DNA of 63,688 nt from the sequence record MK250019.1; one strand, written 5' to 3'. Position numbers and translations under genes: made by a program. This document shows positions 7,836 through 24,489 of this stretch, one piece after another. The notes under the pieces were generated by a model that saw nothing but the letters and a program-made list of their open reading frames with translations, did no database searches and was not told the origin of the DNA. How positions within the stretch are numbered: the first letter of the stretch is position 1; every line of letters starts with the position of its first letter.

Positions 7836-8333
7836 TTAAATCTTTTTCTTCAAAATAGAATCTCTATATTTAACAACCTCATCTTTTGTATAAAAAAGAT
7901 TATTTGTTAATGCTCTCCATGAATCAGCTGCTGGATCTTTTCCAATATAAGATGATGAAGTCTGACCAGATGAATTAATAAAATAATAGAATGTTACTGG
8001 TTTCAAACGATGATACCCAACTCTGGAAATCTCCTTATTTGCATATACCTCATGAAGGCTGCAGATACCAGTGATATAATTAATATCTGTGATTCTATAC
8101 AATCTTGTCTCATATAATACAATATCATCTATCTTAAAAGAAATATCTACACATTTCTTTACAAACTTTGAATTTGAAATATCAAAATCAGAAATTTGTA
8201 CACCATTTGGAAATGACGCAACTTTAGTTATTGCATTATAAGTAAAGATTGTATCCTTTTTCAGATTACCGAATGGAAGGTCTGCACTAAGGATATATTT
8301 CTTCTCTGTTGTCTTATTTTTCTTTGTATTCAT
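7836..8333 (-). CDS. Hypothetical protein
   Basis: 165-aa ORF downstream of a Bacteroidota-type promoter motif. Confidence 0.65.
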   Translation of the reverse strand: MNTKKNKTTEKKYILSADLPFGNLKKDTIFTYNAITKVASFPNGVQISDFDISNSKFVKKCVDISFKIDDIVLYETRLYRITDINYITGICSLHEVYANKEISRVGYHRLKPVTFYYFINSSGQTSSSYIGKDPAADSWRALTNNLFYTKDEVVKYRDSILKKKI

Positions 8334-8364
8334 AATCTTTATTTTTTAATTGTTTATTATTTCA

Positions 8365-8400
8365 TTAACAATACAAAGATACATATTTTATTTGAAATAA
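8365..8400 (-). promoter_or_regulatory. Bacteroidota-type promoter (-7 element TATCTTTG)
   Basis: TATGTATCTTTGTATTGTTAA-like motif, 7 copies in the window, containing the TAnnTTTG consensus. Confidence 0.65.
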
Positions 8401-8406
8401 AAAAAA

Positions 8407-9900
8407 TTAATTAGGTAATTTCATCGGTAATTGTATAGCAGATGGGATATTCCATGCATTTGCTTTAATACCATTTGAATAACCAAATTTTATAATTCTA
8501 TCATTTGCAATCTGCTCTTGTAATGATGATGATATATATCCATCTTTTGTTATATAATAAAGAAATGTTCTATTATCAGATATAACTACATCCTTTTTAT
8601 TGGATATTGCTTTATTTAATTCACCAGGTTCAGATTGATTTGGAAATTCTCGTGATTTAGAAATTAGTAATTGTGGATGTCCCGGATCACATATTTTCTT
8701 ATAACCTGTATTTATATTAATTTCCATAAAATCATACATATATGGTAAATAAGACGGTAACCACAATTTCCAAGCAGCATTTTCATTAATAAGCATAATA
8801 AAATCTTGTATCAATACAGATTTACCATCAGGTGATATGATCGATTTCAATGCTCTAACATTATTATTAATTATATCAGATTTACTATATGAATCAGGAA
8901 GTTCATTAAACCATTCTGGCACAATTTTTAATCTATCATACCTTGTACCTTCATACCTAAATGTATCTTTAACTATAAATTTTCCATTTTCATCTTTATC
9001 AGATAAATCATATGAAATAGTATAAGGTGATTTATAATTATTTTTTATACATTCATGATCCGGTACAAATTTATCTACAATATTTGACAAATTATGCCAG
9101 AAATCAAATGAGTATGAAGATAAACTAAATCTATGTAAATAATCATTTACTGTTTCTTTTGAAAAATAATCTTGCTGTATTTCTGCAATTATACTAGATA
9201 CTGATTTAAATACAAAACAATCACTATAATCTCGATTGTTATCATTATCATTATTAGCTATATAATTATGACAATTATATAACCATGCATCTTCATCAAC
9301 AGAAACAAATGCAAGTTTACTTACATATTTCTTATCAAACTCAGTGGATAATTTTACTTTACCAATATATACGACATTACTATTACCTTTACATCTATAT
9401 AACGTACCTGGTACTAAATCTTTTTCTTTAAATGAATTCTTAGTAAACATCTTTTCAGACATTTCATTTGATTCAATATAATCTGTAGAATTTACAGGAA
9501 GCAGTACAAGTTCAGTACCATAATAACTATATACTAATTTACCTTTAATTTCTTTTTTATCAGTGTTACACCAATTTAATATATACAGTAAATTATCTAT
9601 TGATATTTCAATTTCAAATCCACGCGGATCAAATATACGTGCGAATGTCATACGTTGTGACCATCTTTCACCACCTACTCGCTTATTTAATACAAACCCA
9701 TCAATAGGTTCATTATCTATATATAACGGATCTATTTTCTGATCTCTCCATGAATTCCATGAAGCTTCTTTACGTAATTTATTCATTGCATCATAATAAA
9801 TTACATAACCAATTTTTCCTGTATATGTATCAGATCTTTTATTAAATCCAACTGCTAGTTTTTTAGGAATAAAAAAACTATCTTCTTTTTTACCATTCAT
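8407..9900 (-). CDS. Conserved phage hypothetical protein (497 aa, no TAG)
   Basis: Long ORF; the N-terminus VGF..R.DTY.GK.GYVIYYD...LRKE.SW.SWRD resembles a widespread phage family. Confidence 0.75.
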   Translation of the reverse strand: MNGKKEDSFFIPKKLAVGFNKRSDTYTGKIGYVIYYDAMNKLRKEASWNSWRDQKIDPLYIDNEPIDGFVLNKRVGGERWSQRMTFARIFDPRGFEIEISIDNLLYILNWCNTDKKEIKGKLVYSYYGTELVLLPVNSTDYIESNEMSEKMFTKNSFKEKDLVPGTLYRCKGNSNVVYIGKVKLSTEFDKKYVSKLAFVSVDEDAWLYNCHNYIANNDNDNNRDYSDCFVFKSVSSIIAEIQQDYFSKETVNDYLHRFSLSSYSFDFWHNLSNIVDKFVPDHECIKNNYKSPYTISYDLSDKDENGKFIVKDTFRYEGTRYDRLKIVPEWFNELPDSYSKSDIINNNVRALKSIISPDGKSVLIQDFIMLINENAAWKLWLPSYLPYMYDFMEININTGYKKICDPGHPQLLISKSREFPNQSEPGELNKAISNKKDVVISDNRTFLYYITKDGYISSSLQEQIANDRIIKFGYSNGIKANAWNIPSAIQLPMKLPN

Positions 9901-9906
9901 ATCTAA

Positions 9907-10437
9907 TTAAATTTTATTCTGTTCTCGTAATCGGTCTAATTGCTTATATGGTGAATCTGTTGAATATGATGTACCATGCTTTTGGATTTTAAAGCATTTA
10001 CAATCTAATGATGGTGTATATACATAATTTTTCTGTATACTTTTTTCTATATTATATAAATCGCAGTTACTTTCATAAATTTGTCGTCTGCAAAATATAA
10101 TGTCTGTTACAACAAATAATTTTGGCGATAATCCAAAATTATTTGGATACTTATCTAAATGTAAATACCATGGCTGACCATAAAATGTTATTCGTTTAAA
10201 ATCATCATACCATAAACCAGTATTTGTATCATAATTTGCATCAAATTCAGTTCTACATATTAACATTAAAAAATACCTATCGTACTTATCAACCATAACA
10301 ATGCCATTTGCAAAACGATATTCGGAATTGTTACTAGTACAACTTGTTAATACTTTACATTTAAATAACATCCCTGGATGAATATCAATTTTTTTAATAT
10401 CCGGTAATATCGTTTCTGTATAATTACTCATAATCAT
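9907..10437 (-). CDS. Hypothetical protein
   Basis: 176-aa ORF in tight operon spacing. Confidence 0.65.
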   Translation of the reverse strand: MIMSNYTETILPDIKKIDIHPGMLFKCKVLTSCTSNNSEYRFANGIVMVDKYDRYFLMLICRTEFDANYDTNTGLWYDDFKRITFYGQPWYLHLDKYPNNFGLSPKLFVVTDIIFCRRQIYESNCDLYNIEKSIQKNYVYTPSLDCKCFKIQKHGTSYSTDSPYKQLDRLREQNKI

Positions 10438-10894
10438 ATTTAAATTCTCTAAGAAAAATAGGAGTTAATTCATACTTTTTCCATCCATATAATTTATATT
10501 GATTACATCGTTTTTTGTTATCTAATGTAGTAATAGGTCTATCATATATAGCAACAATTTCTAAATATTTTTTATCAAACCCAAAGTTTAATGTTGTTAT
10601 ATCAAGATTATTAGGATTATAATGATGCCATATACTTTCTTTATTTACATCAATTATAAATGATCTACCCATTACAGGATCTGTAACAGATGTAAAACAT
10701 ATAAGGGCTGCTCCATTTTTATCTGTATACTTACTTATTATAAAAGTTTCAAAAGAAATATATATATTACTAAATCGTTCTGTTGAAATTTTTATAACAA
10801 TAATAGAACCATTAGGTATATGACATAATGTAAATGTACGTCCATCATGAATAGCAACATAACTATCAATAATTTTCCTATTTGTTTTTTCCAT
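10424..10894 (-). CDS. Hypothetical protein
   Basis: 156-aa ORF overlapping the next gene. Confidence 0.6.
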   Translation of the reverse strand: MEKTNRKIIDSYVAIHDGRTFTLCHIPNGSIIVIKISTERFSNIYISFETFIISKYTDKNGAALICFTSVTDPVMGRSFIIDVNKESIWHHYNPNNLDITTLNFGFDKKYLEIVAIYDRPITTLDNKKRCNQYKLYGWKKYELTPIFLREFKYDYE

Positions 10895-11101
10895 AATTTT
10901 ATATATAAAAATAATGCAAAATATAACAAATTTAAATCCACATCATCTTATATTCACTTCAATCCATGTTTCAATCTATAGGGACATTTGTTACATTTTT
11001 GAACGCAACAGGTATGATAAACATCCGCACTTCAATCAGATCCTATAAAACTTCGACGATAAACGTTATATCTTGCATTTATAACTATTCAACTTTTCAT
11101 A

Positions 11102-11172
11102 ATATAGTTTAAAGGATTCGAACCTTTTTCTCTGCTCTCACAGTGTGTTGCCACATACACCATTAAACTATA
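11102..11172 (-). ncRNA. tRNA-like RNA with GAGA tetraloop in place of an anticodon loop
   Basis: Acceptor TATAGTTT/AAACTATA (8 bp), D arm GTGT/ACAC, CTGT-GAGA-GCAG, T arm AAAGG-TTCGAAT-CCTTT. Confidence 0.6.
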
Positions 11173-11221
11173 CATTATAAATGTCATTGATATAGTTATA
11201 TAAACATTAATTCTTAATGTT

Positions 11222-11322
11222 ATTAAAGTCAGATTCGAACTGACACCTCAGCAAGGAGATAATACCACTATTGGGTAACAGAGCATCCCAAGGCACTGAC
11301 CAACAAATTATGCCTATTTAAC
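11222..11322 (-). ncRNA. Atypical tRNA-like RNA (11-nt anticodon-position loop)
   Basis: T arm GTCAG-TTCGAAT-CTGAC, D stem AGGCAT/GTGCCT, stem TTGGG/CCCAA, short AT-rich acceptor. Confidence 0.5.
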
Positions 11323-11382
11323 AACAAACTAATGTATTAATTAATAATTATATATTTTATATGTATATTACTACATAAAGTT

Positions 11383-11766
11383 TTAATGCTTCAAGTTAAA
11401 TTTTTCAAATATAGGCAATAAATCATCACTGAAATCAGTAAATAACTTCTGATATGTTTCCCATGCATCCATGGGTTTATCAGGTTTCGTAAATCTTGCA
11501 GATTCCCAATCGAGAATCGCCTCGTCAAAATGCATATGTTTTTTATATTTACGCAAATGATGTTTTGCAAATCTTGTATGTATTTTTTGTATTACTTTAG
11601 TTCCTAAAAATGGGAAAAATATATACATAAAAATTTTATCCAAATCATGAAAAGGATATTTATAATAACCTATATATTTCTTTTCTAATTTCATTACCAT
11701 AATATAATGTTTAAAACTATATGGTATATGTTTATATGATTTTTTTATATTTGTTATAATGTTCAT
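11383..11766 (-). CDS. HD-superfamily-like phosphohydrolase
   Basis: H...HDLDK...H...KHH...DWE pattern; paralog at 62061..62564. Confidence 0.55.
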   Translation of the reverse strand: MNIITNIKKSYKHIPYSFKHYIMVMKLEKKYIGYYKYPFHDLDKIFMYIFFPFLGTKVIQKIHTRFAKHHLRKYKKHMHFDEAILDWESARFTKPDKPMDAWETYQKLFTDFSDDLLPIFEKFNLKH

Positions 11767-11797
11767 TGTTAATTAAATTATTAATTATTAAATTACT

Positions 11798-11832
11798 ATA
11801 TACAAAGATACATATTTTATTTAAAATAAAAA
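11798..11832 (-). promoter_or_regulatory. Bacteroidota-type promoter
   Basis: CAAAGATA on + strand at 11803-11810. Confidence 0.6.
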
Positions 11833-11874
11833 AGTCACCAATAGGAATTTGACTTCTTATTAGTGACTTTATTT

Positions 11875-12114
11875 TTATTTCAAATATTTAAATATCTCGT
11901 GATATTTCTTTATATTTTCTTTAAAATGTTCAGTCGATATATTAGAATAATCTACATAATCACCTTCTACGTAATAAAGATTATCATCAGATGAAAAATG
12001 TTTAAATCCATATTTATTAGCTTCATTTAATGCTTCATCATCATCTTTTGCTTCAAATCTATGATGGAAAAAGTGTCCATAATAATCTTCTAACTCTACT
12101 TCATATTTTCTCAT
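11875..12114 (-). CDS. Hypothetical protein
   Basis: 79-aa ORF, last gene of the nucleotide operon, followed by a hairpin terminator. Confidence 0.6.
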   Translation of the reverse strand: MRKYEVELEDYYGHFFHHRFEAKDDDEALNEANKYGFKHFSSDDNLYYVEGDYVDYSNISTEHFKENIKKYHEIFKYLK

Positions 12115-12124
12115 AATGAAATTA

Positions 12125-12991
12125 TTATTGTGTAATCATTTTATAAAGTAAATTCCACTTTTCCAATACTTGATCTGATGAACCTCCTGCACGCCATACA
12201 TCTTTATCAAGACTTCCAAGATCATAATGTCTATATCGTCCGCAATCTGGTGAAATTTCACCATATACAGTCTTACCGTCTTCTGATATAAACAAACATA
12301 AGTCATATATTACAATATCTTTTTCTGCAAGAAAATCAGATAATACAGAAAATGTCATAGCTGCTGTTTTTCTTGCTTCTTTTACATCAATATAATAATC
12401 TGCTTGAGCATCACACATAACTTCATCTGCTAACATCTTATGTGTTTCTGGTTCCCAGAATGGATTTCTCCAATCAAAACGTACAATTGGTTCAGGATAT
12501 GGTTCCATATCTTTAATTTCCATACCTGCATAATAAGGATGTGTTTTTCTTACGTGTGATTTACCCATACCAAAATATCGGTGTTTACTTGTACCTGTAT
12601 GATTTGCTTTAACTACAACTTCAATATTTGGTGCATCTTTAATTATACGAGCTAACACAAATTCATCGCCATAATCAAGATATGCATGTTTAATACCATG
12701 TTCTTTAAGCAATTCACATAATACTTTACTTACATGTACACGAGGAATATTACTACCTTCTACAATACCTGTTCTATTATATGTAAATGAATAAATTGTA
12801 GGTTTAAAATAGATAATACAATATTCGTCATCTAATGCACGTATTTCTTTACTTTCACCTTCTACAACTAAAGGCATTTTTCTAAATGTTTCAAAATCAA
12901 TAGAAAATAAGTCTTTAATATTCCATTTAGGATATAATACTGTTTTACAATATTCTATTGATTTCAAATCTTCTTCTTGTATCTTATTCAT
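12125..12991 (-). CDS. purC: Divergent SAICAR synthetase-fold ligase
   Basis: IEVVVK, GEISPDCGRY and SLDKDVWR match PurC; several usual residues differ (KD to PT, DFKLEFG to DLCLFIS). Confidence 0.75.
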   Translation of the reverse strand: MNKIQEEDLKSIEYCKTVLYPKWNIKDLFSIDFETFRKMPLVVEGESKEIRALDDEYCIIYFKPTIYSFTYNRTGIVEGSNIPRVHVSKVLCELLKEHGIKHAYLDYGDEFVLARIIKDAPNIEVVVKANHTGTSKHRYFGMGKSHVRKTHPYYAGMEIKDMEPYPEPIVRFDWRNPFWEPETHKMLADEVMCDAQADYYIDVKEARKTAAMTFSVLSDFLAEKDIVIYDLCLFISEDGKTVYGEISPDCGRYRHYDLGSLDKDVWRAGGSSDQVLEKWNLLYKMITQ

Positions 12992-12997
12992 AAATTA

Positions 12998-13489
12998 TTA
13001 CCAAGTTAAATTATTATCCTTAATATATTTCTCAACAACAGGAGGTACAAACTCTCCAATAGGAAGTTTATAATGTACTAACTCTCTTACAAATGTAGAT
13101 GAAATATCAATATTATAAGGTTCACAAAAGCCCATTACCAACATTGTTTCTACACCTGCTAAATAATGATTAGTTGCAGCCAAAGACTTTTCATATGTAA
13201 AATCTTCTGAATTTCTAATACCTCTAACAATATATGAAACATTATTTTTCTTACAATAATCAGAAATTAATGTATCAGTCATATCAATTACTGTTACATT
13301 AGGATAATCCTTGAAAATTTCTTTAATTAACTTAATTCGCTCTGAACGTTTAATAAGCCCTTCACCTTTCTTTAAATTTGTTGCTAATGCAATAATAAAT
13401 TCATCACATAATTTATATGTCTGATCTACAATTGCCTTATGCCCATTTGTAAATGGATCAAATGATCCAGGAAATATAAATTTCTTCAT
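12998..13489 (-). CDS. coaD: Phosphopantetheine adenylyltransferase-like nucleotidyltransferase
   Basis: FPGSFDPFTNGH, IVRGIRNSEDFTYE, ISSTFVREL. Confidence 0.85.
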   Translation of the reverse strand: MKKFIFPGSFDPFTNGHKAIVDQTYKLCDEFIIALATNLKKGEGLIKRSERIKLIKEIFKDYPNVTVIDMTDTLISDYCKKNNVSYIVRGIRNSEDFTYEKSLAATNHYLAGVETMLVMGFCEPYNIDISSTFVRELVHYKLPIGEFVPPVVEKYIKDNNLTW

Positions 13490-13492
13490 CTT

Positions 13493-14143
13493 TTAATTTT
13501 CAATATTTTGTGAAACCCAAAGTCCTAATTGCTTTAATGCTTGCTTTCGATGACTCTTCAAATTTTTTCTTGCTGAATCTAATTCAGCATATGTTTTACC
13601 AAATGTATTATCTCCTACAAATATAGGATCATATCCAAATCCATTTGTACCTCTTAATTCATCTAATATATATCCATATGAATATCCGCTAAACGTTTTT
13701 TCGATAATACCATTTTTTGCTATTGCAAAACATACTTCAAAATATGCAGATCGTTCATTAAATGGAATCTTTTTGATATATTGTAACAATTTCTCATTGT
13801 TAAGTCTATCATGTTCTGACTTATCTGTTGTAAACTCTTCATGCGGTACATTAGTAACATTTAATTCATTATCTATTGTAACTTCATGAAAACGAGCTGA
13901 ATATGGTCCAGGTAAATTATTCAATCCAGGAACAACTAAACCACTATCTTCTGCAATAACATATGTATCAGGATATTCTTTACTATATGCAGTTGCTTTA
14001 AGTATAGCATTATCTTTAATTGTTTTACCAGTCTCTTGAACATCTAATGCATGTGGTTCAATTTCATATCCTAATGGACTTAAAATTGATGCAATCTCTC
14101 TAATTTTACCAGGATTACTTGTACCTACAATAATTTTACTCAT
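13493..14143 (-). CDS. rdgB: HAM1/RdgB non-canonical purine NTP pyrophosphatase
   Basis: TSNPGK, EDSGL...LPGPYSARF, GFGYDPIF, SHR. Confidence 0.9.
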   Translation of the reverse strand: MSKIIVGTSNPGKIREIASILSPLGYEIEPHALDVQETGKTIKDNAILKATAYSKEYPDTYVIAEDSGLVVPGLNNLPGPYSARFHEVTIDNELNVTNVPHEEFTTDKSEHDRLNNEKLLQYIKKIPFNERSAYFEVCFAIAKNGIIEKTFSGYSYGYILDELRGTNGFGYDPIFVGDNTFGKTYAELDSARKNLKSHRKQALKQLGLWVSQNIEN

Positions 14144-14604
14144 GATTTATTCATTATTTGTTTCTTAATAAAATCTCTTATAATTTCTATAATAGTTCCT
14201 GTACTATCATATGGTATTCTTGAAACTAAATATACATTACTATATTTTTTTTCTTTACAATGATTATATAGTAACATAAATGATTTTCTATAATACTCTA
14301 AATCTTCTAATGTATGAAATTCTTCATCTAATGAATCTCCTCTTTTTTGTATTCTTTGTTGACAATGTTCTGGAAAATCATCTAAAATAATATATAAAGT
14401 ATCATTATCAATATTATTATCGATGTAATCATACATTTTTTCTTCTGAATCTTTATTTAGTAATGTAGCTTTACTGAAAATACCTCTATCTTTAAATATA
14501 CAATTATTAAAAAATTGTTTAATAAGATTAATTATATAAGTTTTACCAGTACCATCATTACCATCGAATTCAATATTAAACGTTAATTGTTTTTCTGTTT
14601 GCAT
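14140..14604 (-). CDS. Nucleoside monophosphate (dTMP-like) kinase
   Basis: IEFDGNDGTGKT P-loop. Confidence 0.65.
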   Translation of the reverse strand: MQTEKQLTFNIEFDGNDGTGKTYIINLIKQFFNNCIFKDRGIFSKATLLNKDSEEKMYDYIDNNIDNDTLYIILDDFPEHCQQRIQKRGDSLDEEFHTLEDLEYYRKSFMLLYNHCKEKKYSNVYLVSRIPYDSTGTIIEIIRDFIKKQIMNKS

Positions 14605-15221
14605 AAATTATAAACTTTTTGTATATTTGTTGGTAACCAGCAATCCATTAAACTAGCATGCTCAAATATACATGTATCAGTATTAATAATATTACTTAGT
14701 ATCTTTATGCCATTTGCTTTTAATGTTGCACCTGTTTCAACAACATCTATAATACAATCAGCACCAATATCGATATATCCTTCTGTTGAACCTGATGTAT
14801 TCAATGTATAATATGGACAATGCATTTTATTTGTAAAATAATGCTTTGCTATTGTTTCAAATTCAGTAGCACATATGATAGGGTGTTTCAATGACGTTAA
14901 TTCATCTAATGTCATTTTTGATGCTAAACATATTTGTACCTTATTTAAACCTGTATGTGATACTAATTCTAATTCATTTTCATACTCACTATTATTAACC
15001 ATATCATAGCCACATATACCAAATTCACAAAACTTACTTGCAATTAATTCTGGTATTGCTTTTGGTTTAGCTATAAATAATGCACAGTCATCTGACCAAT
15101 CAGGAAAATAATATTTACGAGTATTTTCATCTGGCATATCAATATTACATTCATTAAATAATGATTTAACTCCTGTATATAATCTACCTTTTGGTACAAC
15201 TAATATTGGTTTATTATTCAT
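14583..15221 (-). CDS. hisG: ATP phosphoribosyltransferase, short form
   Basis: VPKGRL, GICGYD, SGSTEG...ADCIIDVVETGATLKANG. Confidence 0.85.
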   Translation of the reverse strand: MNNKPILVVPKGRLYTGVKSLFNECNIDMPDENTRKYYFPDWSDDCALFIAKPKAIPELIASKFCEFGICGYDMVNNSEYENELELVSHTGLNKVQICLASKMTLDELTSLKHPIICATEFETIAKHYFTNKMHCPYYTLNTSGSTEGYIDIGADCIIDVVETGATLKANGIKILSNIINTDTCIFEHASLMDCWLPTNIQKVYNLCKQKNN

Positions 15222-15669
15222 AATTATTTTTCTTTAAAATTCTTAGATTATCTCTATCTTTTAAAATAAAATTTGTAATCTCTTCAATTAAATATTTGTT
15301 ATTAGTAGTCATATAGAAACATGTAGTTGAATCATCTCCTCTATGCTTATCCCAACCCTTTCTACCAAATTCAATTTTCAAATTATCTTTCTTAAATAAA
15401 AATCCAGGAAACCAATAATATACAAAACCTGAAAATGAATTTGTTTTCTTTACTTCACCATTAGTTAACAATGCTAATTCATTTAAAAATTTTCTATATT
15501 GATAACCAAACATTCTCGCTGTATATGATGTAGTATTCCTAAAAATTAAATCATAATAATTTTCATGACCAGTTGCATAAGATTTTCCTGATAAACTTAC
15601 ACATTCTATATGTTTCCCGAATATATTAATAATTTGCTTTACTATTTCATCTAATTCTGCATTTACCAT
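15214..15669 (-). CDS. Hypothetical protein
   Basis: 151-aa ORF between the RNA ligase and hisG. Confidence 0.6.
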   Translation of the reverse strand: MVNAELDEIVKQIINIFGKHIECVSLSGKSYATGHENYYDLIFRNTTSYTARMFGYQYRKFLNELALLTNGEVKKTNSFSGFVYYWFPGFLFKKDNLKIEFGRKGWDKHRGDDSTTCFYMTTNNKYLIEEITNFILKDRDNLRILKKNNYE

Positions 15670-15671
15670 AA

Positions 15672-16355
15672 TTACTCTAATATTTTACATTCCTCTTCTG
15701 TATATCTCTTATGTAATTCAGTTAACCACCATTTTGTTTTAACTTTTACTTTAGGCATTCGTTGTCCCTTTAATAATGTTGATCGCCTAATTACTACACC
15801 TTCTTTTATATATGGATATTTACAATTAGTTTCAGTCCAATCATTATTTTGTATATCTTTAATAAAGTCATTAACTAATGGTCCTGTATAAACTAATTGT
15901 GGTAATTCAATACCACAATCTTTAAATAAATCCATATAAATTTTTGGTTCAATATATCCTTTCTTTTTTATAAATACATCAATTAATGCAAGATGCATAT
16001 TATCTTTATCTTCTAATGAATGAAATCCTGCGAAACTATGTTCTCCATACCATTCAAAGAAAAATGTAATTTCATCAACGTCAGAGAATACATCTTTCTT
16101 ACCTCTATGTTGTTCAACAATATTAGATAATATAGTTTCATAATTATGTGATTTAAAATAACGTACAGCATCACCAAATTGTTCAGATGACTCATCTACC
16201 ATACATTTTCTTGAACCAAAATTTGTGAACATCTTTTTCTTAACAGAATATTTTGCACAGAAATTTTGTCCATCTAATTTATTAAATGCCCATACTTGTT
16301 CACCTAGTAATTCAGTATTATATTTTATATTATCTATTGAATCGTAATGTTTCAT
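15672..16355 (-). CDS. ATP-dependent RNA ligase (Rnl-type adenylyltransferase domain)
   Basis: Motif I NKLDGQN, III FFEWYG, IV EGVVIR, V KVKVK. Confidence 0.75.
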   Translation of the reverse strand: MKHYDSIDNIKYNTELLGEQVWAFNKLDGQNFCAKYSVKKKMFTNFGSRKCMVDESSEQFGDAVRYFKSHNYETILSNIVEQHRGKKDVFSDVDEITFFFEWYGEHSFAGFHSLEDKDNMHLALIDVFIKKKGYIEPKIYMDLFKDCGIELPQLVYTGPLVNDFIKDIQNNDWTETNCKYPYIKEGVVIRRSTLLKGQRMPKVKVKTKWWLTELHKRYTEEECKILE

Positions 16356-16374
16356 GTAATGTAATTATTTTAGT

Positions 16375-16578
16375 TTAACTTATTTTAGCAGAAGCATTTT
16401 TACATATATCAATGTGTTCTCCTTTATTATCAGTTATTAAATTTAAAATGTTATTATCTGTTATTAAATTTAAAATATATGACCACATCTCTTTATCTTC
16501 TAACCCATCTGTAATTATATCTATATCATAATTATCTGGTAATTCAAACTGTAAATGAATATCTAACTTTCTTTTCAT
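16375..16578 (-). CDS. Hypothetical protein
   Basis: 67-aa ORF in operon spacing. Confidence 0.45.
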   Translation of the reverse strand: MKRKLDIHLQFELPDNYDIDIITDGLEDKEMWSYILNLITDNNILNLITDNKGEHIDICKNASAKIS

Positions 16579-16591
16579 AATTAACTCATTA

Positions 16592-17170
16592 TTAAATATT
16601 ATCTAATTTACTACAATTATATCCTTGATCGTATGATAATTTTAAAAGTTCTGTAACTAACTTAATATCTTTTGTATTAGAATCTCTATATTTCTTAATT
16701 ATTTGTTCAATGAAATAATTTCGTTTATTTGTATATTCAAGTAATGTTTTTGCATCATCAATTACATCTTTTGTACTTTCTAACTGATTTTTATCTGTAT
16801 AAACATTATTATACTCTTTACATTCTATAATACTACAATTTTCATCTTCATCTATATTATCAATATCATAATCTCCAATTACTGGAACCTTATAACATGT
16901 ATAAAATATAGTATGATTAAAAAGAGTTATTTCATACAAATATGAAATATCTCTTGCAACTTTATCATCTTCTTGTATATCATCATATGAATCAAGAATT
17001 TGTTTTGTTAATGATTCATAATCATATTCTTCTACATTTTTTGAATATTTTTCTAATACTGCTTTTAAATCATCACCAGTACCACTGTCTGGATAACCAT
17101 CACAATGTCTATATAAAATATTGCGTCCTGTTATACCACTTTGAACTATAATATTACAACGTGTCGGCAT
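16592..17170 (-). CDS. Phage hypothetical protein (YxHxDGYP family)
   Basis: LYRHCDGYP motif. Confidence 0.65.
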   Translation of the reverse strand: MPTRCNIIVQSGITGRNILYRHCDGYPDSGTGDDLKAVLEKYSKNVEEYDYESLTKQILDSYDDIQEDDKVARDISYLYEITLFNHTIFYTCYKVPVIGDYDIDNIDEDENCSIIECKEYNNVYTDKNQLESTKDVIDDAKTLLEYTNKRNYFIEQIIKKYRDSNTKDIKLVTELLKLSYDQGYNCSKLDNI

Positions 17171-17945: not shown

Positions 17946-17968
17946 ATGATAATAAAAATGAAAAAATG

Positions 17969-18039
17969 TTGGGATAACAGGATTCGAACCTATGATTACT
18001 GATCCAGAGTCAGTCGTATTACCACTATACTATATCCCA
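17969..18039 (-). tRNA. tRNA-Gln(CTG)
   Basis: Full cloverleaf; ACTGA-CTCTGGA-TCAGT. Confidence 0.92.
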
Positions 18040-18448
18040 ATAAAATCTATAAGCTTACTATACTATATATTATATATCGTTTTGGTTTTATGAGTTAATA
18101 AGATTTATTATACCAAAAACATTATTTTCATAAACAACCACATTTATTATTTACCGGTATGTGTTTCATTCACCTATTAATATATATGTAATATATTAAT
18201 AACATCTGGTTACTCTTTATTACTAATAAACAATGTTCCTATTTCATCATCTTAATAGAAGTAAATATGAAATTATTTTAATTATCTTCATATAACAATA
18301 AAACAGAAGATATTTTCAAATCATTAAAATAATCTATTTACTAATGTCAATTGCATTCTTTATTTGTGCACTATTTATAATGCAATAATCTCTCATTAAG
18401 GAACGAACTTATAGACCACTACATCTTTAAATCTGTTGTGGATTTTTG

Positions 18449-18533
18449 CGGAGAGCAGTGGTCCCGACCCACATTCACATACATGAACGAGCAATTTAGC
18501 AGATTGTCCCTAACCCCGTTAGGTTTACTCTCC
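18449..18533 (-). tRNA. tRNA-Ser(GCT), atypical T loop
   Basis: Long variable arm, G73, loop CTGCTAA; T loop reads GTCGGGA. Confidence 0.75.
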
Positions 18534-18575
18534 AAATTGATTAATAAATTATATCAATCAATTTTATTTACTATA

Positions 18576-18604
18576 TTTATAGTATATTATAATCAAAAAG
18601 TTTA
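18576..18604 (-). promoter_or_regulatory. sigma70-like promoter TAAACT-N17-TATAAA
   Basis: Upstream of tRNA-Ser(GCT). Confidence 0.5.
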
Positions 18605-18614
18605 CTTTTTATCA

Positions 18615-18959
18615 CTAAAAATATAATATAATTTTATTATCAGTTGATTCCTGACGATATTCACATCTATAACCATATGTATAGATAAGTAATGATATAA
18701 ATCGTTGAATCCATTGTTTATAACAATCTTCTGCTGGTATACTATGTTTTTTTGTTAGCATTGCAACCATAGTTAATTCTGATATGACACAATACGTACT
18801 TCCTTTTGCTACTGCATCTTTAAGCTTTTCATTTACATAATCAATAATAACATCACCACGTCTTAAAAATGATTGATTTGCTTTATATGCAATAGAATTA
18901 CGTAATTCTGTAGCTTTTGGAATTATAATATCACTTTTCTTCTGTTTAAATTTTATCAT
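18615..18959 (-). CDS. Hypothetical protein
   Basis: 114-aa ORF. Confidence 0.55.
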   Translation of the reverse strand: MIKFKQKKSDIIIPKATELRNSIAYKANQSFLRRGDVIIDYVNEKLKDAVAKGSTYCVISELTMVAMLTKKHSIPAEDCYKQWIQRFISLLIYTYGYRCEYRQESTDNKIILYF

Positions 18960-19339
18960 TGAAAATTTTCATATTTATCCTTTAATTGTTGAAACCTTCT
19001 ATAATTTGTATACAATACATTTGCATCACCACTGGTAGGATTATTCACTAATTTATAATAATCTAACTCTGCCTGTAAATATTCAGATTTTGCTATTTGG
19101 TAATCTGCTTCTTTATAAGCATTGAATAAATCTGGTTCATATTGTTCAAGTGAATCACCATATTTTTCTTCTGTTACATTATTAATTAATGAAACTCTCG
19201 AATCATTAAATATATGGTGTTGAAAATCTTCAGTTATATTTGAAGATTCTTTTTTTATTATTTCATCCTTTTTATTAACTACATATATAACATACTATTT
19301 AGATGAAAAAAGTAATTTAATTAATTTAAAAATGTTCAT
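18956..19339 (-). CDS. Hypothetical protein (127 aa, one TAG)
   Basis: MNIFKLIKLLFSSK(Q)YVIY...; its TGA overlaps the next ATG. Confidence 0.55.
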
Positions 19340-19697
19340 CTTCATTTAAAATAAATTTCGTACAATCTCGCGTTTTATATAGAAATTCTTTTGCTGCTTC
19401 ATATGATAAAAAATAATTTGAAACTAATTCTTTATCAATTCCAGTACATACTATCTGGTTATCAGTTTTCATTAAAAAATCGCGGAAAAATGGCAAAATA
19501 CTGAAGTAATTCCAGTAAATTTTGTAATATTTTATATGTTTTCCTAAACCTATATCAAATTCATCAACATATTTAATAGTATACTCAATTGGACCAAAAA
19601 TATTAAATATTTTCTTAATTTGTATATCTCTATCATATGTTAATGATATTAGGTACATATAAAAAAATGTGAATATTAATATATTTGTAATCATCAC
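19326..19697 (-). CDS. Hypothetical membrane-anchored protein
   Basis: Hydrophobic N-terminus. Confidence 0.55.
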   Translation of the reverse strand: MMITNILIFTFFYMYLISLTYDRDIQIKKIFNIFGPIEYTIKYVDEFDIGLGKHIKYYKIYWNYFSILPFFRDFLMKTDNQIVCTGIDKELVSNYFLSYEAAKEFLYKTRDCTKFILNEDEHF

Positions 19698-19836
19698 AAT
19701 TCATTTTCTAAATTTTCTAATTTTATCTCTAACAACCTTATCCTGTTCTCTTGTGTTAAAATAATAGTTTTTAACTTATTAATAGAATCAATAATTTCAT
19801 TTATCTTATCATATAATTGCTTTTCTTGTTCATTAC

Positions 19837-20148
19837 TCATATTATTATCTTATCATTTAAAATATCATCAACTATATTAACTAATATAGGACAAACACAA
19901 TTATAATAATCAAAGTCTTTTTCAAAAGAAATATCATTATTAGAAAAATCCTTATATAATTGTAAAAGAATAAATGCAACATATTTATTAAATGGACGAT
20001 CAGTGATATTATATGATGAAATATTACGTAATATTTCATATACACTTTCTGCATCCATATAAGTATCCAACTCTTTTACGTATTTAACTATATTATTTTG
20101 AATCTGAATAATATAATTATTTATATTTGAATTATTTATAATTATCAT
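19837..20148 (-). CDS. Hypothetical protein
   Basis: 103-aa ORF. Confidence 0.5.
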   Translation of the reverse strand: MIIINNSNINNYIIQIQNNIVKYVKELDTYMDAESVYEILRNISSYNITDRPFNKYVAFILLQLYKDFSNNDISFEKDFDYYNCVCPILVNIVDDILNDKIII

Positions 20149-20153
20149 ATTTC

Positions 20154-20366
20154 TTACTCTTCAATAAATTTTTTAATTGTTTTTGCCATATCAATAATTC
20201 TATCAAATTCATATCGGTCTCTATTAGCCTTCTCTGAATTTGCCCAATACATTGTATAAATCAATGCACGATCAGCTGCAGGTAACTTACCAAAGTTATC
20301 GTCATTGATTAATTCATCAAATTTATTGTTCTTAAACTTAATATTTTTAGTTTCATTTGTATTCAT
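20154..20366 (-). CDS. Hypothetical protein
   Basis: 70-aa ORF in operon spacing. Confidence 0.5.
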   Translation of the reverse strand: MNTNETKNIKFKNNKFDELINDDNFGKLPAADRALIYTMYWANSEKANRDRYEFDRIIDMAKTIKKFIEE

Positions 20367-20388
20367 ATAATTTATATATCAATTTATA

Positions 20389-20601
20389 TTATTTGTTTTC
20401 ATTATTATTAATAACTTTAAACTTATCAGTATCAGGAATAATGGCTAAACTACCCCATGTTCCATGAAGCTGTCCAATACTATCGATAAATTGAACAACA
20501 CCTTCACGTCCAATATATGAGTTTACAACTGTATCATAACCACAATCATCAACCCATAAAATTTTAATAGTATCTCCTATCTTTACGTTTTCTTGTTCCA
20601 T
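20389..20601 (-). CDS. DUF4314-like small protein
   Basis: GVVQFIDSIGQLHGTWGSLAIIPDTDKF pattern. Confidence 0.6.
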   Translation of the reverse strand: MEQENVKIGDTIKILWVDDCGYDTVVNSYIGREGVVQFIDSIGQLHGTWGSLAIIPDTDKFKVINNNENK

Positions 20602-20624
20602 AACAAATCTTATTTAAACATTAT

Positions 20625-20656
20625 ATAACAAAGATACATATTTTATATTAAAAAAG
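20625..20656 (-). promoter_or_regulatory. Bacteroidota-type promoter
   Basis: CAAAGATA at 20629-20636. Confidence 0.6.
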
Positions 20657-20683
20657 AAAGGATACTAACTTAAATTAGTATCC

Positions 20684-21070
20684 TTAATATATTTTCCACT
20701 ATTCAAAATGATTTCTTGTATCTAAATAAAATAAATTAGTTTCATTCTTATATGCTTCCTGTTCAAATGATATATTTCTATATGCTTTATGCGAAAATCT
20801 ATCTTTTGTAAATAATACACGCCATAACCATTCAAAGAAATATATTATATAGAATATAATACCACCTATATACTATTGAAGACACAATGGTAAAAAACAT
20901 GCAAAATCTTTCATTTGTTCAGTATGTATAGACTCATGATTTAATATTTTTTCTTTATATCTAGGAATCTATAATTTATATGCATATTCTTTTCTGACAA
21001 ATAATGTACCGAAAAGATTAATAGCAATAAAACCCTATACAGGTATAATACTATTATAAACAATTTTCAT
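20684..21070 (-). CDS. HExxH-containing membrane-associated protein (128 aa, 4 TAG)
   Basis: MKIVYNSIIPV(Q)GFIAINLFG...NHESIH...AYRNISFEQEAY, a pattern typical of Bacteroidota and their phages. Absent from the ORF track. Confidence 0.7.
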
Positions 21071-21099
21071 TTTATTAACTTATTCTTTTAAGTATTTAT

Positions 21100-21834
21100 T
21101 TAATCATTATTAATACGTTCTGTTTTTAACTCAATAATTATATCTTCTTTTATAAATAAAACAGTATTATTATCAATATTTCTATATTCAATATTTTTAA
21201 TTACATTCACAAAATTATGAACAAAAGTATTTAATATAGATATATCTGTATCTTCTATTCTAAATATAAATTTAGATAATTCTGGATATGCTAATGATAT
21301 TTCTTTCTTTGTAAAATATTCATCTCCATTTATTAAACCTAAACATTGTCCAGATTGAAATGCAATTAATTTTAATATATCTTCTTTTGACATATTATTA
21401 TTTAATGTTGTGAAATCTATTGTTGTTAAATCAATATTTAATAATGTATTTAATCTACAATCAAAGTCACTACGTAATGCGAGTTTTACTTCTGATCTAT
21501 ATTGAGATCTAGGTAAATGAGATAAAATAGAACGTATAGAGCGTACTATCTTTAATGGTATATTGCGCTTTACATTTTTAGTAATTAATAAAGGAGTATT
21601 CTGATGATGTAAAGAATATGTATTTTTAATGGCATTATTTAATTCATCTTTTGTTCCTTTATAACAATTAGAAATAATACCATCATCAATAGTTATTAAA
21701 TTTCTATTTTCATTTTTATCAGATGAACAAAATATCTTACATTCATTTAATGACGGTAATTTATCTACAATATATGCTATGTCTATATCAGTTGAATCAG
21801 ATGAACCATATATATAATTTCCATATATTTCCAT
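21100..21834 (-). CDS. Pol-beta superfamily nucleotidyltransferase
   Basis: IYGSSDSTDIDIAYIV (GS-x-DxD). Confidence 0.6.
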   Translation of the reverse strand: MEIYGNYIYGSSDSTDIDIAYIVDKLPSLNECKIFCSSDKNENRNLITIDDGIISNCYKGTKDELNNAIKNTYSLHHQNTPLLITKNVKRNIPLKIVRSIRSILSHLPRSQYRSEVKLALRSDFDCRLNTLLNIDLTTIDFTTLNNNMSKEDILKLIAFQSGQCLGLINGDEYFTKKEISLAYPELSKFIFRIEDTDISILNTFVHNFVNVIKNIEYRNIDNNTVLFIKEDIIIELKTERINND

Positions 21835-21839
21835 TTTAA

Positions 21840-22106
21840 TTATTCTAAATTAATTTGCTTAAATATTAAATAATTCTCTAAATCTATAAGAGTCTGTAAC
21901 GATTCATCAAAGTATTGATGATCATAATTTTCATCATTTCTTGCATGCAAATCTATTAAAGCTTCATGAAATCTTGAATCAGGATATTTCTCAAAATATT
22001 TTTTCAAAATTTCCAAAATTTTCATATTACTTTCATAACGTTTACTTCTGTAATACTCAAACATCTTCTGCTCTGACTCATTTCTTTTTATATCATTCTC
22101 TACCAT
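21840..22106 (-). CDS. Hypothetical protein
   Basis: 88-aa ORF. Confidence 0.55.
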   Translation of the reverse strand: MVENDIKRNESEQKMFEYYRSKRYESNMKILEILKKYFEKYPDSRFHEALIDLHARNDENYDHQYFDESLQTLIDLENYLIFKQINLE

Positions 22107-22129
22107 AATTTATAAAATTAAATTAATAG

Positions 22130-22993: not shown

Positions 22994-23132
22994 AAAATTA
23001 AATATTTATAAAAATTTAATTATTTATTACATTTATCGAATATATTGCAAACCTTACTAATAGTTTTCAAAAAATTATTAATAAAAAATAGGTTATGAAA
23101 TACGAGATTTCATAACCTATTAATACTTCATG

Positions 23133-23218
23133 CGGAAGCTGTAGGATTCGAACCTACGGGCCGTCTCCGGTCTCGGGTTTTCAAGACCCGCGCAATCGAC
23201 CAACTCTGCCAAACTTCC
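23133..23218 (-). tRNA. tRNA-Ser(TGA)
   Basis: Type II cloverleaf, CGGGT-CTTGAAA-ACCCG, G73. Confidence 0.93.
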
Positions 23219-23359
23219 AAATAAAAATTAGGATTTATATTCTGTGAGAATCCTTTAACTCAGTACCAATACGATGGTCTCCAAGACTTTCCATTAAATA
23301 AATTTAATGTTCTTGTAGTTACGATTCTATATCATAATAATATAGACTATTAATAATTG

Positions 23360-24467: not shown

Positions 24468-24489
24468 AAATTTTTTTAAAATACATTAT

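What the first reader, a model, noticed from the sequence alone, without database searches (positions are those of the whole stretch)
12125..15221. Five-enzyme nucleotide operon: HisG, NMP kinase, HAM1, CoaD-like and divergent PurC
Seen: five abutting or overlapping TAG-free genes, each from a different bacterial pathway, with no other his, coa or pur genes in the window. The PurC homolog has altered active-site motifs. Established: HisG makes N1-phosphoribosyl-ATP; HAM1 hydrolyses non-canonical purine NTPs; CoaD-fold enzymes transfer adenylyl groups to phosphates; PurC ligates an amine to a carboxylate. Inference: a dedicated pathway for a non-standard nucleotide rather than scattered auxiliary genes. 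One option is intramolecular adenylyl transfer on PR-ATP, giving N1-cyclic ADP-ribose or a related decoy of immune signals. Another is HAM1 removing dITP-type signals as used by the Kongming defence. A third is a modified-base precursor.
Basis: partly seen in the sequence, partly recalled or inferred. Interest (0 to 1): 0.85.

Follow-up and report, generated by a model that had tools for sequence, protein, structure and literature searches.

The report
Phage histidine-branch purine-analogue pathway
Four of the five genes are a megaphage copy of a conserved gene set that I found undescribed in the searched papers. Giant viruses, tiny parasitic bacteria and predatory bacteria also carry it, and it diverts the first steps of histidine synthesis into an unusual purine nucleotide, most likely one that blocks adenine-deaminating enzymes. 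The fifth gene (CoaD) is a Lak-only add-on.

Summary
The window is Prevotella phage Lak-A2. The five abutting minus-strand genes are real and lie in a 9.3-kb TAG-free block. All five are under purifying selection.

HisG, a roughly 120-150 aa thymidylate-kinase-like kinase, a divergent HAM1 and the PurC-like protein are not scattered auxiliary genes. They recur together in other phages, giant viruses, CPR bacteria, an archaeon and predatory bacteria. They are also repeatedly fused into single polypeptides. Cellular versions and some viral ones add a HisA-HisI-HisE fusion.

The PurC-like protein keeps the SAICAR-synthetase fold but belongs to a family far from canonical PurC. It has replaced the K, E and D residues that canonical PurC keeps in its ATP site.

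The only characterised precedent for a HisG homologue working with a PurC homologue is pentostatin/coformycin biosynthesis. My best model is therefore a histidine-pathway branch. It would make an inosine-like, probably ring-expanded nucleotide that inhibits adenine-nucleotide deaminases. Lak would rely on host HisIE and HisA. The product is inferred, not shown, and no reductase was found.

CoaD is a canonical PPAT found only in Lak-type loci.

Its specific chemistries are not.

The parts
14583..15221 (-). Short-form ATP phosphoribosyltransferase (HisG), first enzyme of the module
   Evidence: TIGR00070 scores 116.7 bits, above the cut-off. The PRPP-loop motif (D-V-V-E-T-G-A-T-L-x-A-N-G) aligns to solved HisG. 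It is 34-53% identical to module HisGs in bacteria and other phages. dN/dS between Lak-A and Lak-B is 0.29.
14140..14604 (-). Minimal thymidylate-kinase-like P-loop kinase, a core module gene
   Evidence: A family profile matches thymidylate kinase 2pbr at E 7e-10. The family keeps invariant DGNDGxGK and DRG motifs and is only about 120 aa long in bacteria. It is found fused to HisG, to the PurC-like protein or to HAM1 elsewhere. dN/dS is 0.30.
13493..14143 (-). Module-type HAM1/RdgB pyrophosphatase paralogue
   Evidence: Pfam Ham1p_like scores 164 bits and TIGR00042 is just above its cut-off. Genomes with the module also hold a separate, higher-scoring housekeeping HAM1. It lies next to or is fused with the PurC-like gene in 18 of 18 close bacterial loci. 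dN/dS is 0.063.
12998..13489 (-). Canonical-looking phosphopantetheine adenylyltransferase (CoaD), a Lak-specific accessory gene
   Evidence: TIGR01510 scores 133 bits against a cut-off of 103. All PPAT motifs align to solved PPATs. It is absent from all non-Lak module loci, and phage L057 has endonuclease V in the same slot. dN/dS is 0.018 with dS 0.94. No CoaE was found in the genome.
12125..12991 (-). PurC-like (SAICAR-synthetase-fold) enzyme of a distinct family, the signature gene of the module
   Evidence: The AlphaFold model has pLDDT 82, and Foldseek puts SAICAR synthetases on top with TM 0.6-0.78. The purC equivalog scores 27 against a cut-off of 190. It is 55-60% identical to bacterial homologues with many invariant residues. 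Only 367 relatives turned up among 1.84 billion cluster representatives. Canonical PurC sits on a branch of about 10 substitutions per site.
15214..15669 (-). 151-aa ORF of unknown function; its end overlaps the HisG start by 8 nt, so it is probably co-transcribed
   Evidence: It gave no Pfam or NCBIfam hit. It is found only in Lak-type phages. It is 80% identical between Lak-A and Lak-B, with dN/dS 0.20.
15672..16355 (-). RNA ligase (PF09414) immediately upstream in the same orientation; context, not part of the module
   Evidence: Pfam RNA_ligase scores 35.1 bits. It is conserved in Lak-B at 91%.
7836..17170 (-). TAG-free block of 13 genes that contains the cluster
   Evidence: It has zero in-frame TAG, against 1-14 per gene in flanking code-15 genes. 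Lak phages leave large genome regions TAG-free.

Best explanation
SHOWN. HisG, the mini kinase, HAM1 and the PurC-like gene of Lak-A2 are a reduced phage copy of one conserved pathway module. The full form is HisA-HisI-HisE + HisG + PurC-like + HAM1 + kinase. It occurs in CPR bacteria, a Woesearchaeote, Myxococcota, Bdellovibrionota, Planctomycetes and Acidobacteria. Viral copies of the module genes occur in other phages and in giant viruses, including Bodo saltans virus. The five sampled host genomes (four CPR, one Myxococcales) lack histidinol dehydrogenase, so the his genes there do not make histidine.

INFERRED. HisG condenses ATP or dATP with PRPP. HisE, HisI and HisA then give PRFAR, and in Lak these three steps are borrowed from the Prevotella host. 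The PurC-like enzyme binds the aminoimidazole-carboxamide ribotide half of PRFAR. It has lost the acidic and lysine residues that PurC uses for ATP-Mg chemistry, so it would act as a cyclase rather than a ligase. This is what is reported for CofB/PenC of coformycin and pentostatin biosynthesis. The product would be an inosine-like, ring-expanded (1,3-diazepine) nucleoside 5'-phosphate.

The HAM1 paralogue would keep this analogue (and ITP/dITP) out of the triphosphate pool. In phages it might also replace HisE. The kinase would either supply ADP/ATP from AMP or raise the product to the diphosphate.

The biological effect would be inhibition of adenine-nucleotide or adenosine deaminases. That would preserve the adenylate pool of an invaded cell for a 25%-GC virus. 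It could also blunt deaminase-based immunity such as RADAR RdrB or Kongming KomA.

CoaD is a bona fide PPAT riding in the operon, with no demonstrated link to the module.
For: Co-conservation. Among the 18 genome loci whose PurC-like protein is at least 46% identical to Lak's over most of its length, HAM1 lies within 1.2 kb in 18, the kinase in 15, HisG in 15 and the HisA-I-E fusion in 9.

Gene fusions seen:
- kinase::HisG
- kinase::PurC-like
- kinase::HAM1
- PurC-like::HAM1::kinase
- kinase+HisG+PurC-like+HAM1
- HisA+HisI+HisE+HisG+PurC-like
- a 1264-aa Bodo saltans virus protein and a 1228-aa phage protein with PurC-like+HisA+HisI+HisE+HisG

Not housekeeping. Four CPR genomes and one Myxococcales genome with the module lack HisD. 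The two larger genomes checked keep a separate canonical PurC, and three of five genomes keep a second HAM1. The His_biosynth domain is HisA-type.

PurC-like enzyme. It has the SAICAR-synthetase fold, but K, E and D of the ATP site are replaced by invariant C, F and G.

Precedent. PenA (a HisG homologue that uses dATP), PenC/CofB/AdeA (SAICAR-synthetase homologues) and recruited HisA homologues make pentostatin, coformycin and adechlorin. Fungal Cns3 is a nucleoside kinase::HisG fusion needed for pentostatin. Like the pen cluster, Lak carries HisG and PurC-like genes but no HisI/E/A.

Inosine theme. Endonuclease V occupies the CoaD slot in phage L057. PurA sits in or beside the module in 6 CPR loci. 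Bodo saltans virus is 25% GC and also encodes adenylosuccinate synthetase.

Selection. All five genes are under purifying selection.

RNA libraries. Contigs from four metatranscriptomic studies cover the cluster, and one 3.8-kb contig spans PurC-like to the RNA ligase.
Against: - No SDR reductase (the PenB/CofA equivalent) is in the Lak-A2 genome or conserved in the module. A coformycin-type transition-state mimic with the 8-hydroxyl would therefore need another reductase, or the product stops at the 8-keto stage, or the product is different.
- No actinomycete PenC/CofB sequence could be retrieved. The relationship of this family to CofB is untested, and the family motifs were not found in any actinomycete genome scanned.
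- Three of four Saccharibacteria genomes with PurC-like (plus a kinase and HAM1 in the one locus annotated) show no HisG. PRFAR may not be the universal substrate.
- A kinase and a triphosphate pyrophosphatase in one module look opposed unless they act on different nucleotides.
- The CPR genomes lack PF00962 deaminases and PurH but have IMPDH and PurA. This equally fits an ATP-to-IMP conversion role.
- Host HisIE/HisA were not checked in Prevotella.
- The CofB mechanism is quoted from memory, because the primary paper is not held.
- RNA-library contigs do not prove transcription.
Confidence: 0.5

Rival explanations
1. Deaminase-free purine interconversion. The module turns adenine nucleotides into IMP/ITP. 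For example, the PurC-like enzyme closes the carboxamide nitrogen of ProFAR/PRFAR onto the formimino carbon, releasing the amino-sugar phosphate and IMP. HAM1 returns ITP to IMP, and PurA and IMPDH then redistribute the IMP.
For: CPR genomes with the module lack PF00962 deaminases, PurH and canonical PurC but have IMPDH and PurA. PurA is in or beside the module in 6 CPR loci. HAM1 has intact catalytic motifs (sequence, motifs recalled from memory), and endonuclease V sits in L057. An IMPDH/GMP-reductase-like gene lies two genes upstream in phage-like contig L003. The loss of ATP-Mg ligands fits an ATP-independent cyclisation.
Against: Five enzymes plus PRPP would replace one deaminase. HisA (the Amadori step) would be unnecessary, yet it is conserved. 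Myxococcales with the module already have deaminases and PurH. AT-rich viruses (Lak and Bodo saltans virus, both about 25% GC) have no obvious need to drain ATP into IMP. There is no biochemical precedent.
Confidence: 0.17
2. The module makes some other PRFAR-derived or PR-ATP-derived small molecule, such as a toxin, a signal or a cofactor-like nucleotide, whose chemistry has no known precedent.
For: The PurC-like family is very far from canonical PurC. It has many extra invariant Arg/Lys/His residues and two invariant Cys. No reductase is present. The module is found in parasites and predators. More distant relatives sit in nucleoside natural-product-like clusters: MetRS-like + aminotransferase + P450, and SAH-hydrolase-like + HAD.
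Against: It is a less parsimonious reading than the documented HisG-homologue plus PurC-homologue chemistry.
Confidence: 0.18
3. Precursor of a modified base that is installed in phage DNA, RNA or tRNA.
For: A kinase is present. A tRNA array and an RNA ligase lie nearby.
Against: The same module occurs in free-living and symbiotic bacteria and in giant viruses. HAM1 would destroy the triphosphate needed for incorporation. No transglycosylase or dedicated polymerase was seen next to it.
Confidence: 0.07
4. Immune-signal decoy. CoaD cyclises or adenylylates PR-ATP to an N1-linked cyclic ADP-ribose-like molecule, or the genes form an NAD-reconstitution analogue (phosphoribosyltransferase + adenylyltransferase + amide ligase).
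For: A phosphoribosyltransferase and an adenylyltransferase lie in one operon. CoaD is under extreme constraint, with dN/dS 0.018.
Against: CoaD is absent from all non-Lak modules and is replaced by endonuclease V in L057. CoaD keeps every PPAT motif and scores above the PPAT equivalog cut-off. The full module contains the ring-opening enzymes HisI and HisA. The PurC-like enzyme lacks the ATP-Mg ligands needed by a ligase.
Confidence: 0.04
5. Five unrelated auxiliary metabolic genes, each doing its textbook job (PR-ATP, NMP phosphorylation, ITP hydrolysis, dephospho-CoA, SAICAR).
For: HisG, HAM1 and CoaD score above their NCBIfam equivalog cut-offs.
Against: Four of the genes show multi-way gene fusions and co-conservation. 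The PurC-like protein fails the purC equivalog (27 against 190) and lacks catalytic residues. Sampled host genomes with the module lack HisD and keep separate canonical PurC and HAM1 genes.
Confidence: 0.03

Closest known systems
Pentostatin / coformycin / adechlorin biosynthesis (PenA-PenB-PenC, CofA-CofB, AdeA/AdeC/AdeK) of actinomycetes
   Same: A dedicated HisG homologue works with a SAICAR-synthetase homologue. The intervening histidine-pathway steps come from primary metabolism or from recruited HisA homologues. Lak, like the pen cluster, carries HisG and PurC-like genes but no HisI/E/A.
   Different: There is no short-chain dehydrogenase (PenB/CofA) here. The kinase and the HAM1 paralogue are obligatory partners and are often fused. 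The hosts are phages, giant viruses, CPR bacteria and predators, not actinomycetes. Sequence relationship to PenC/CofB could not be tested.
Cordyceps militaris Cns3 (N-terminal nucleoside kinase + C-terminal HisG, required for pentostatin)
   Same: It has the same kinase::HisG domain order as the Blastocatellia and Myxococcales fusion proteins, and the same kinase-HisG pairing as Lak.
   Different: It is fungal. Its kinase domain is credited with 3'-phosphorylation of adenosine for cordycepin. No Cns3 sequence was compared here.
Early histidine pathway (HisG, HisE, HisI, HisA)
   Same: The domain families are the same. HisG is above the equivalog cut-off and HisIE reaches the HisIE cut-off in a CPR copy.
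   Different: No HisD was found in the genomes checked. The HisA domain is below its equivalog cut-off. The genes are coupled to PurC-like, HAM1 and kinase genes rather than to HisB/C/D/F/H.
SAICAR synthetase PurC
   Same: The fold and several motifs are shared, including the DKD-x-(F/W)-R motif and the ribotide-binding strand.
   Different: It scores 27 bits against a cut-off of 190. GKAK becomes GESK, and K/E/D become C/F/G. It has extra invariant loops (H-x-G-T-S-K-H-R-Y and V-R-F-D-W-R-N-P). It coexists with a true PurC in two genomes.
Kongming defence (KomA deaminase, KomB inactive HAM1 sensor, KomC SIR2) and RADAR RdrB
   Same: These systems also centre on adenine-nucleotide deamination, dITP/ITP and a HAM1-fold protein, and they are triggered by phage nucleotide kinases.
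   Different: The Lak cluster has no deaminase and no SIR2 domain among its genes. Its HAM1 keeps the catalytic motifs. These systems are candidate targets of the Lak module, not relatives of it.

Membership tests
Pentostatin/coformycin-type 1,3-diazepine nucleoside pathway | Dedicated HisG homologue encoded with the pathway | tested here: met
   HisG lies in the operon. It is adjacent or fused to the PurC-like gene in 15 of 18 close bacterial loci and in viral fusions.
Pentostatin/coformycin-type 1,3-diazepine nucleoside pathway | SAICAR-synthetase homologue that is not a working PurC (PenC/CofB type) | tested here: inconclusive
   The fold is SAICAR synthetase, the protein is not a purC equivalog, and the ATP-Mg residues are replaced. 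No PenC/CofB sequence could be obtained for comparison.
Pentostatin/coformycin-type 1,3-diazepine nucleoside pathway | NADPH-dependent short-chain dehydrogenase (PenB/CofA) that reduces the 8-keto intermediate | tested here: not met
   PF13561 gave no hit in the whole Lak-A2 record. Clustering of module neighbourhoods found no conserved reductase.
Pentostatin/coformycin-type 1,3-diazepine nucleoside pathway | Use of HisE/HisI/HisA steps to reach the branch-point intermediate | tested here: met
   A HisA-HisI-HisE fusion is adjacent in 9 of 18 loci and fused to the PurC-like domain in several proteins. Lak lacks these genes and must use the host's. Host genes were not checked.
Pentostatin/coformycin-type 1,3-diazepine nucleoside pathway | Product is a diazepine nucleoside or nucleotide that inhibits adenosine or AMP deaminase | not testable with these tools
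   This needs LC-MS and enzyme assays.
SAICAR synthetase (PurC, TIGR00081) | Equivalog score and ATP-Mg catalytic residues | tested here: not met
   It scores 27.1 bits against a cut-off of 189.9. K/E/D are replaced by C232/F234/G244. It sits on a separate long branch from canonical PurC.
ATP phosphoribosyltransferase (HisG, TIGR00070) | Equivalog score and PRPP-binding loop | tested here: met
   It scores 116.7 bits against a cut-off of 75.75. The loop aligns to 1z7m. It is the short form without a regulatory domain. HisZ was not sought.
RdgB/HAM1 non-canonical NTP pyrophosphatase (TIGR00042) | Equivalog score and catalytic motifs | tested here: met
   It scores 151.2 bits against a cut-off of 145.35. 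It is a divergent paralogue: module copies score about 142-147 bits on Pfam, against 207-222 for housekeeping copies in the same genomes. Substrate not tested.
Phosphopantetheine adenylyltransferase (CoaD, TIGR01510) | Equivalog score and PPAT motifs | tested here: met
   It scores 133 bits against a cut-off of 103.3. It aligns along its full length to 34 solved PPATs with the nucleotide-binding and ISST-type motifs kept.
Thymidylate kinase (TIGR00041 / PF02223) | Full-length fold with NMP-binding region, score above cut-off | tested here: not met
   It scores 23.5-24.1 bits, below the cut-offs. The family profile matches TMPK but lacks about 55 residues between the P-loop and the DR motif.
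Phage NAD reconstitution pathways (NARP1/NARP2) | Nampt or Namat/Adps enzymes plus an NMN adenylyltransferase | tested here: not met
   The phosphoribosyltransferase is HisG-type and the adenylyltransferase is PPAT-type by equivalog. NMNAT models score far below their cut-offs.

The most novel reading that the evidence does not exclude
Megaphages, giant viruses, CPR/DPANN episymbionts and predatory bacteria share a compact pathway. It hijacks the host's histidine pathway to synthesise a coformycin-like nucleotide that shuts down adenine-nucleotide deaminases. This would keep the victim's adenylate pool intact and disarm deaminase-based immunity such as RADAR and Kongming. It would be the first small-molecule enzyme inhibitor shown to be biosynthesised by a phage as a counter-defence.
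Probability: 0.25. Interest if true: 0.92.

Novelty: new variant of a known kind. Interest (0 to 1): 0.8.

Why it matters
If the model holds, a natural-product logic known only from actinomycete and fungal antibiotic clusters is widespread among viruses and obligate parasites or predators. It would be streamlined there to four or five genes, or even to one polypeptide.

That would open several lines of work:
- It would add biosynthesis of a small-molecule inhibitor to the known phage counter-defence strategies.
- It would explain orphan his genes in CPR, DPANN and giant-virus genomes.
- It would give directly testable candidates against RADAR and Kongming.
- It would provide compact enzymes for making deaminase inhibitors.

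Even if the product is different, the multi-way fusions define a new, unannotated nucleotide pathway. Its signature enzyme is currently mislabelled as SAICAR synthetase.

Tried and rejected
- NAD-salvage analogue. My first idea was phosphoribosyltransferase + adenylyltransferase + amide ligase + kinase. I rejected it because CoaD is a PPAT by equivalog and is not part of the conserved module.
- Fetching a true PenC/CofB for comparison. The genome-contig scan, a second homologue search seeded with the Nostocales relative, and a plasmid tblastn returned no actinomycete sequence. Cluster look-ups gave no organism names. The primary CofB paper and one review are not held.
- Searching for the missing enzymes in Lak-A2. 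HisA/F, HisI, HisE, SDR and CoaE are all absent.
- The 151-aa upstream ORF. It gave no family and no Atlas relatives outside Lak.
- Pfam on ten further window neighbours gave nothing.
- The promoter/terminator scan gave no more sites than shuffled sequence.
- Literature searches for a prior description of this module in phages, Lak, jumbo phages, giant viruses or CPR found none.
- RNA-library contigs cover the cluster but cannot prove transcription.
- One joint in run X15 skips 13418-15215. It has only 24 letters on one side, so I treated it as unreliable.

Full report
WHAT IS THERE

The window is 100% identical over the cluster to Prevotella phage Lak-A2 (MK250019, 541 kb, circular, human faeces). 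The cluster is conserved in Lak-A1 and Lak-C1 at 99.5-99.7% nucleotide identity and in Lak-B1 to B9 at 82%.

Their families are:
- HisG, above the equivalog cut-off.
- A small P-loop protein with weak dTMP-kinase/dNK similarity.
- HAM1, just above the equivalog cut-off.
- CoaD/PPAT, above the cut-off.
- A SAICAR-synthetase-like protein that fails the purC equivalog, 27 bits against 190.

The genes lie in a 13-gene block (7836-17170) with no in-frame TAG. Neighbouring genes need TAG read as a residue. This matches the published description of Lak code-15 usage, with large TAG-free regions.

Comparing Lak-A2 with a Lak-B-type contig gives dS of 0.5-1.1 for all genes. dN/dS is 0.018 for CoaD, 0.063 for HAM1, 0.080 for PurC-like, 0.29 for HisG and 0.30 for the kinase. 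All five are therefore functional genes.

Contigs from four metatranscriptomic studies cover the cluster at 95-99% identity. One is a 3.8-kb contig running from PurC-like to the RNA ligase. DNA carry-over cannot be excluded.

THE DECISIVE RESULT: A CONSERVED, REPEATEDLY FUSED MODULE

The PurC-like protein has homologues at 55-60% identity in Myxococcales, Blastocatellia, Armatimonadetes and others, with dozens of invariant residues. Against 1.84 billion cluster representatives the family profile finds only 367 proteins. In a tree, canonical PurC sits on a branch of about 10 substitutions per site.

Neighbourhoods show one recurring gene set: [HisA-HisI-HisE fusion] - HisG - PurC-like - HAM1 - small kinase. 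It appears in:
- Myxococcota, Bdellovibrionota/Oligoflexia, Planctomycetia and Acidobacteria.
- CPR lineages (Falkow-, Uhr-, Vogel-, Parcu- and Saccharibacteria).
- A Woesearchaeote.

Eighteen genome loci have a PurC-like protein at least 46% identical to Lak's over most of its length. HAM1 is within 1.2 kb in 18, the kinase in 15, HisG in 15 and HisA-I-E in 9. Three further loci with only partial matches showed no neighbours.

The genes are fused in many permutations:
- kinase::HisG
- kinase::PurC-like
- kinase::HAM1
- PurC-like::HAM1(::kinase)
- kinase+HisG+PurC-like+HAM1 (927 aa)
- HisA+HisI+HisE+HisG+PurC-like (999 aa)
- 1228-1264-aa proteins in a 481-kb phage and in Bodo saltans virus that add the PurC-like domain to HisA, HisI, HisE and HisG

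This is strong evidence from gene fusion and neighbourhood that the four Lak genes act in one pathway.

The gut-phage copies (Lak, Wendovervirus, two jumbo-phage contigs and three contigs binned as bacteria) form one clade with 100/100 support.

IT IS NOT HISTIDINE OR PURINE HOUSEKEEPING

- Five genomes with the module have no histidinol dehydrogenase.
- The His_biosynth domain is HisA-like, not HisF-like.
- A Myxococcales and a Bdellovibrionota genome keep a separate canonical PurC.
- Three of five genomes keep a second, higher-scoring HAM1 beside the module copy.

WHAT LAK LACKS AND ADDS

The complete Lak-A2 record has no HisA/F, HisI, HisE, SDR or CoaE. A 100%-complete Lak-like record and two other phage records also lack HisI. 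The gut-phage module is therefore reduced to HisG + kinase + HAM1 + PurC-like and must use host HisIE and HisA. A Bacteroides control genome has these genes. Prevotella itself was not checked.

CoaD occurs only in Lak-type loci. It keeps every PPAT motif and is under extreme constraint. In phage L057 the same slot holds endonuclease V. I therefore treat CoaD as a Lak-specific accessory gene of unknown relation to the module.

MECHANISM

The only characterised systems that pair a HisG homologue with a SAICAR-synthetase homologue are the pentostatin, coformycin and adechlorin clusters. These are PenA, which uses dATP; PenC/CofB/AdeA; and recruited HisA homologues such as AdeK. The fungal pentostatin enzyme Cns3 is a kinase::HisG fusion.

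From memory (Ren et al. 2020, not held), CofB converts the HisA product PRFAR to 8-ketocoformycin 5'-phosphate. ATP acts only as an activator in that reaction.

The Lak family fits a non-ligase role. It keeps the PurC fold. However, the K, E and D that two solved PurCs carry in the ATP-Mg site are invariant C232, F234 and G244 here, and GKAK is GESK. The family also gains many invariant basic residues, which would suit a bis-phosphorylated substrate.

The expected product is an inosine-like, ring-expanded nucleotide. That would explain why a HAM1 paralogue is always attached and why one phage adds endonuclease V: both deal with hypoxanthine-type bases.

The kinase is thymidylate-kinase-like and is replaced by an adenylate-kinase-like domain in some fusions. 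It may supply ADP/ATP from AMP, or it may phosphorylate the product. This is unresolved.

BIOLOGICAL READING

The carriers found are mainly viruses, episymbionts and predators.

Inhibiting adenosine, AMP or (d)ATP deaminases would preserve the adenylate pool of the invaded cell. This fits four observations:
- Lak is about 25% GC.
- Bodo saltans virus is 25% GC.
- Bodo saltans virus encodes adenylosuccinate synthetase.
- PurA sits in the module in six CPR loci.

ADA-fold deaminases also drive the Kongming and RADAR defences. In Kongming a phage nucleotide kinase plus KomA makes the dITP signal. A deaminase inhibitor combined with an active dITPase would be a plausible counter-measure. This step is inference only.

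WEAK POINTS AND RIVALS

- No reductase equivalent to PenB/CofA was found.
- Relationship to PenC/CofB could not be tested, and no actinomycete carries the family motifs.
- Some Saccharibacteria have PurC-like without HisG, with a kinase and HAM1 in the one locus annotated.
- CPR genomes with the module lack PF00962 deaminases and PurH but have IMPDH and PurA. A deaminase-free ATP-to-IMP conversion is therefore a serious rival.

I put about 0.85 on 'one dedicated histidine-branch nucleotide pathway'. I put about 0.4-0.5 on a coformycin-type product and about 0.25 on the counter-defence role.

NOVELTY

I found no description of this module in papers on Lak phages, jumbo phages, giant viruses or CPR. 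I also found no link between phages and coformycin-type inhibitors. It is best classed as a new variant of the pentostatin/coformycin kind of pathway. It has different accessory enzymes and a very different set of hosts.

Noticed in passing
window 7836-17170 versus flanks: There is a sharp boundary between a TAG-free 13-gene block and flanking genes with 1-14 in-frame TAG codons each (code 15). The module therefore sits in a part of the genome that is readable under the host's standard code.
   Followed up: partly
window 17968-33053: An array of 19 tRNA genes lies on the minus strand just upstream. It includes three tRNA-Met, a tRNA-Ile(TAT), and an 82-nt tRNA-His called with anticodon ATG. 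No TAG-reading suppressor tRNA lies in this window.
   Followed up: no
window 15672-16355: An RNA ligase (PF09414) lies directly upstream of the cluster and close to the tRNA array. This suggests a tRNA-repair function in the same early block.
   Followed up: no
L057:6353-7944: A 229-kb phage has a kinase::HAM1 fusion followed by endonuclease V exactly where Lak has CoaD. A DUF7666 protein follows the PurC-like gene.
   Followed up: partly
P0235 (ATZ80961.1, Bodo saltans virus) and L067:7233-10919: Giant-virus and 481-kb-phage proteins of 1228-1264 aa fuse a P-loop domain, the PurC-like domain, HisA, HisI, HisE and HisG into one chain. The Bodo saltans virus protein is currently annotated only as HisIE.
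   Followed up: partly
L016, L017, L018, L020, L021, L046: A canonical adenylosuccinate synthase (PurA) lies in or beside the module in six CPR loci from several CPR lineages.
   Followed up: partly
L039:4645-11494 and L042:5552-10350: More distant PurC-like relatives (about 38-40% identity) sit in different clusters. In Bradyrhizobium the neighbours are a MetRS-like protein, an aminotransferase and a P450. In a Nostocales genome they are an SAH-hydrolase-like protein, a HAD hydrolase and a glutamine amidotransferase. Both contexts look like nucleoside natural-product clusters.
   Followed up: no
window 11800-12122: In RNA-library contigs from other Lak strains the sequence diverges immediately downstream of the PurC-like stop codon, and the 79-aa ORF region is not covered. 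The 3' edge of the cluster is therefore a synteny break between strains.
   Followed up: no
window (whole): The window contains 1131 N positions (masked or gaps). I did not examine or fill them.
   Followed up: no
L003:4893-5918 and 11291-11809: A phage-like contig carrying the module also encodes an IMPDH/GMP-reductase-like protein two genes upstream. It also encodes an RNA 2'-phosphotransferase (PTS_2-RNA) and a GlnRS/GluRS-type synthetase nearby.
   Followed up: no
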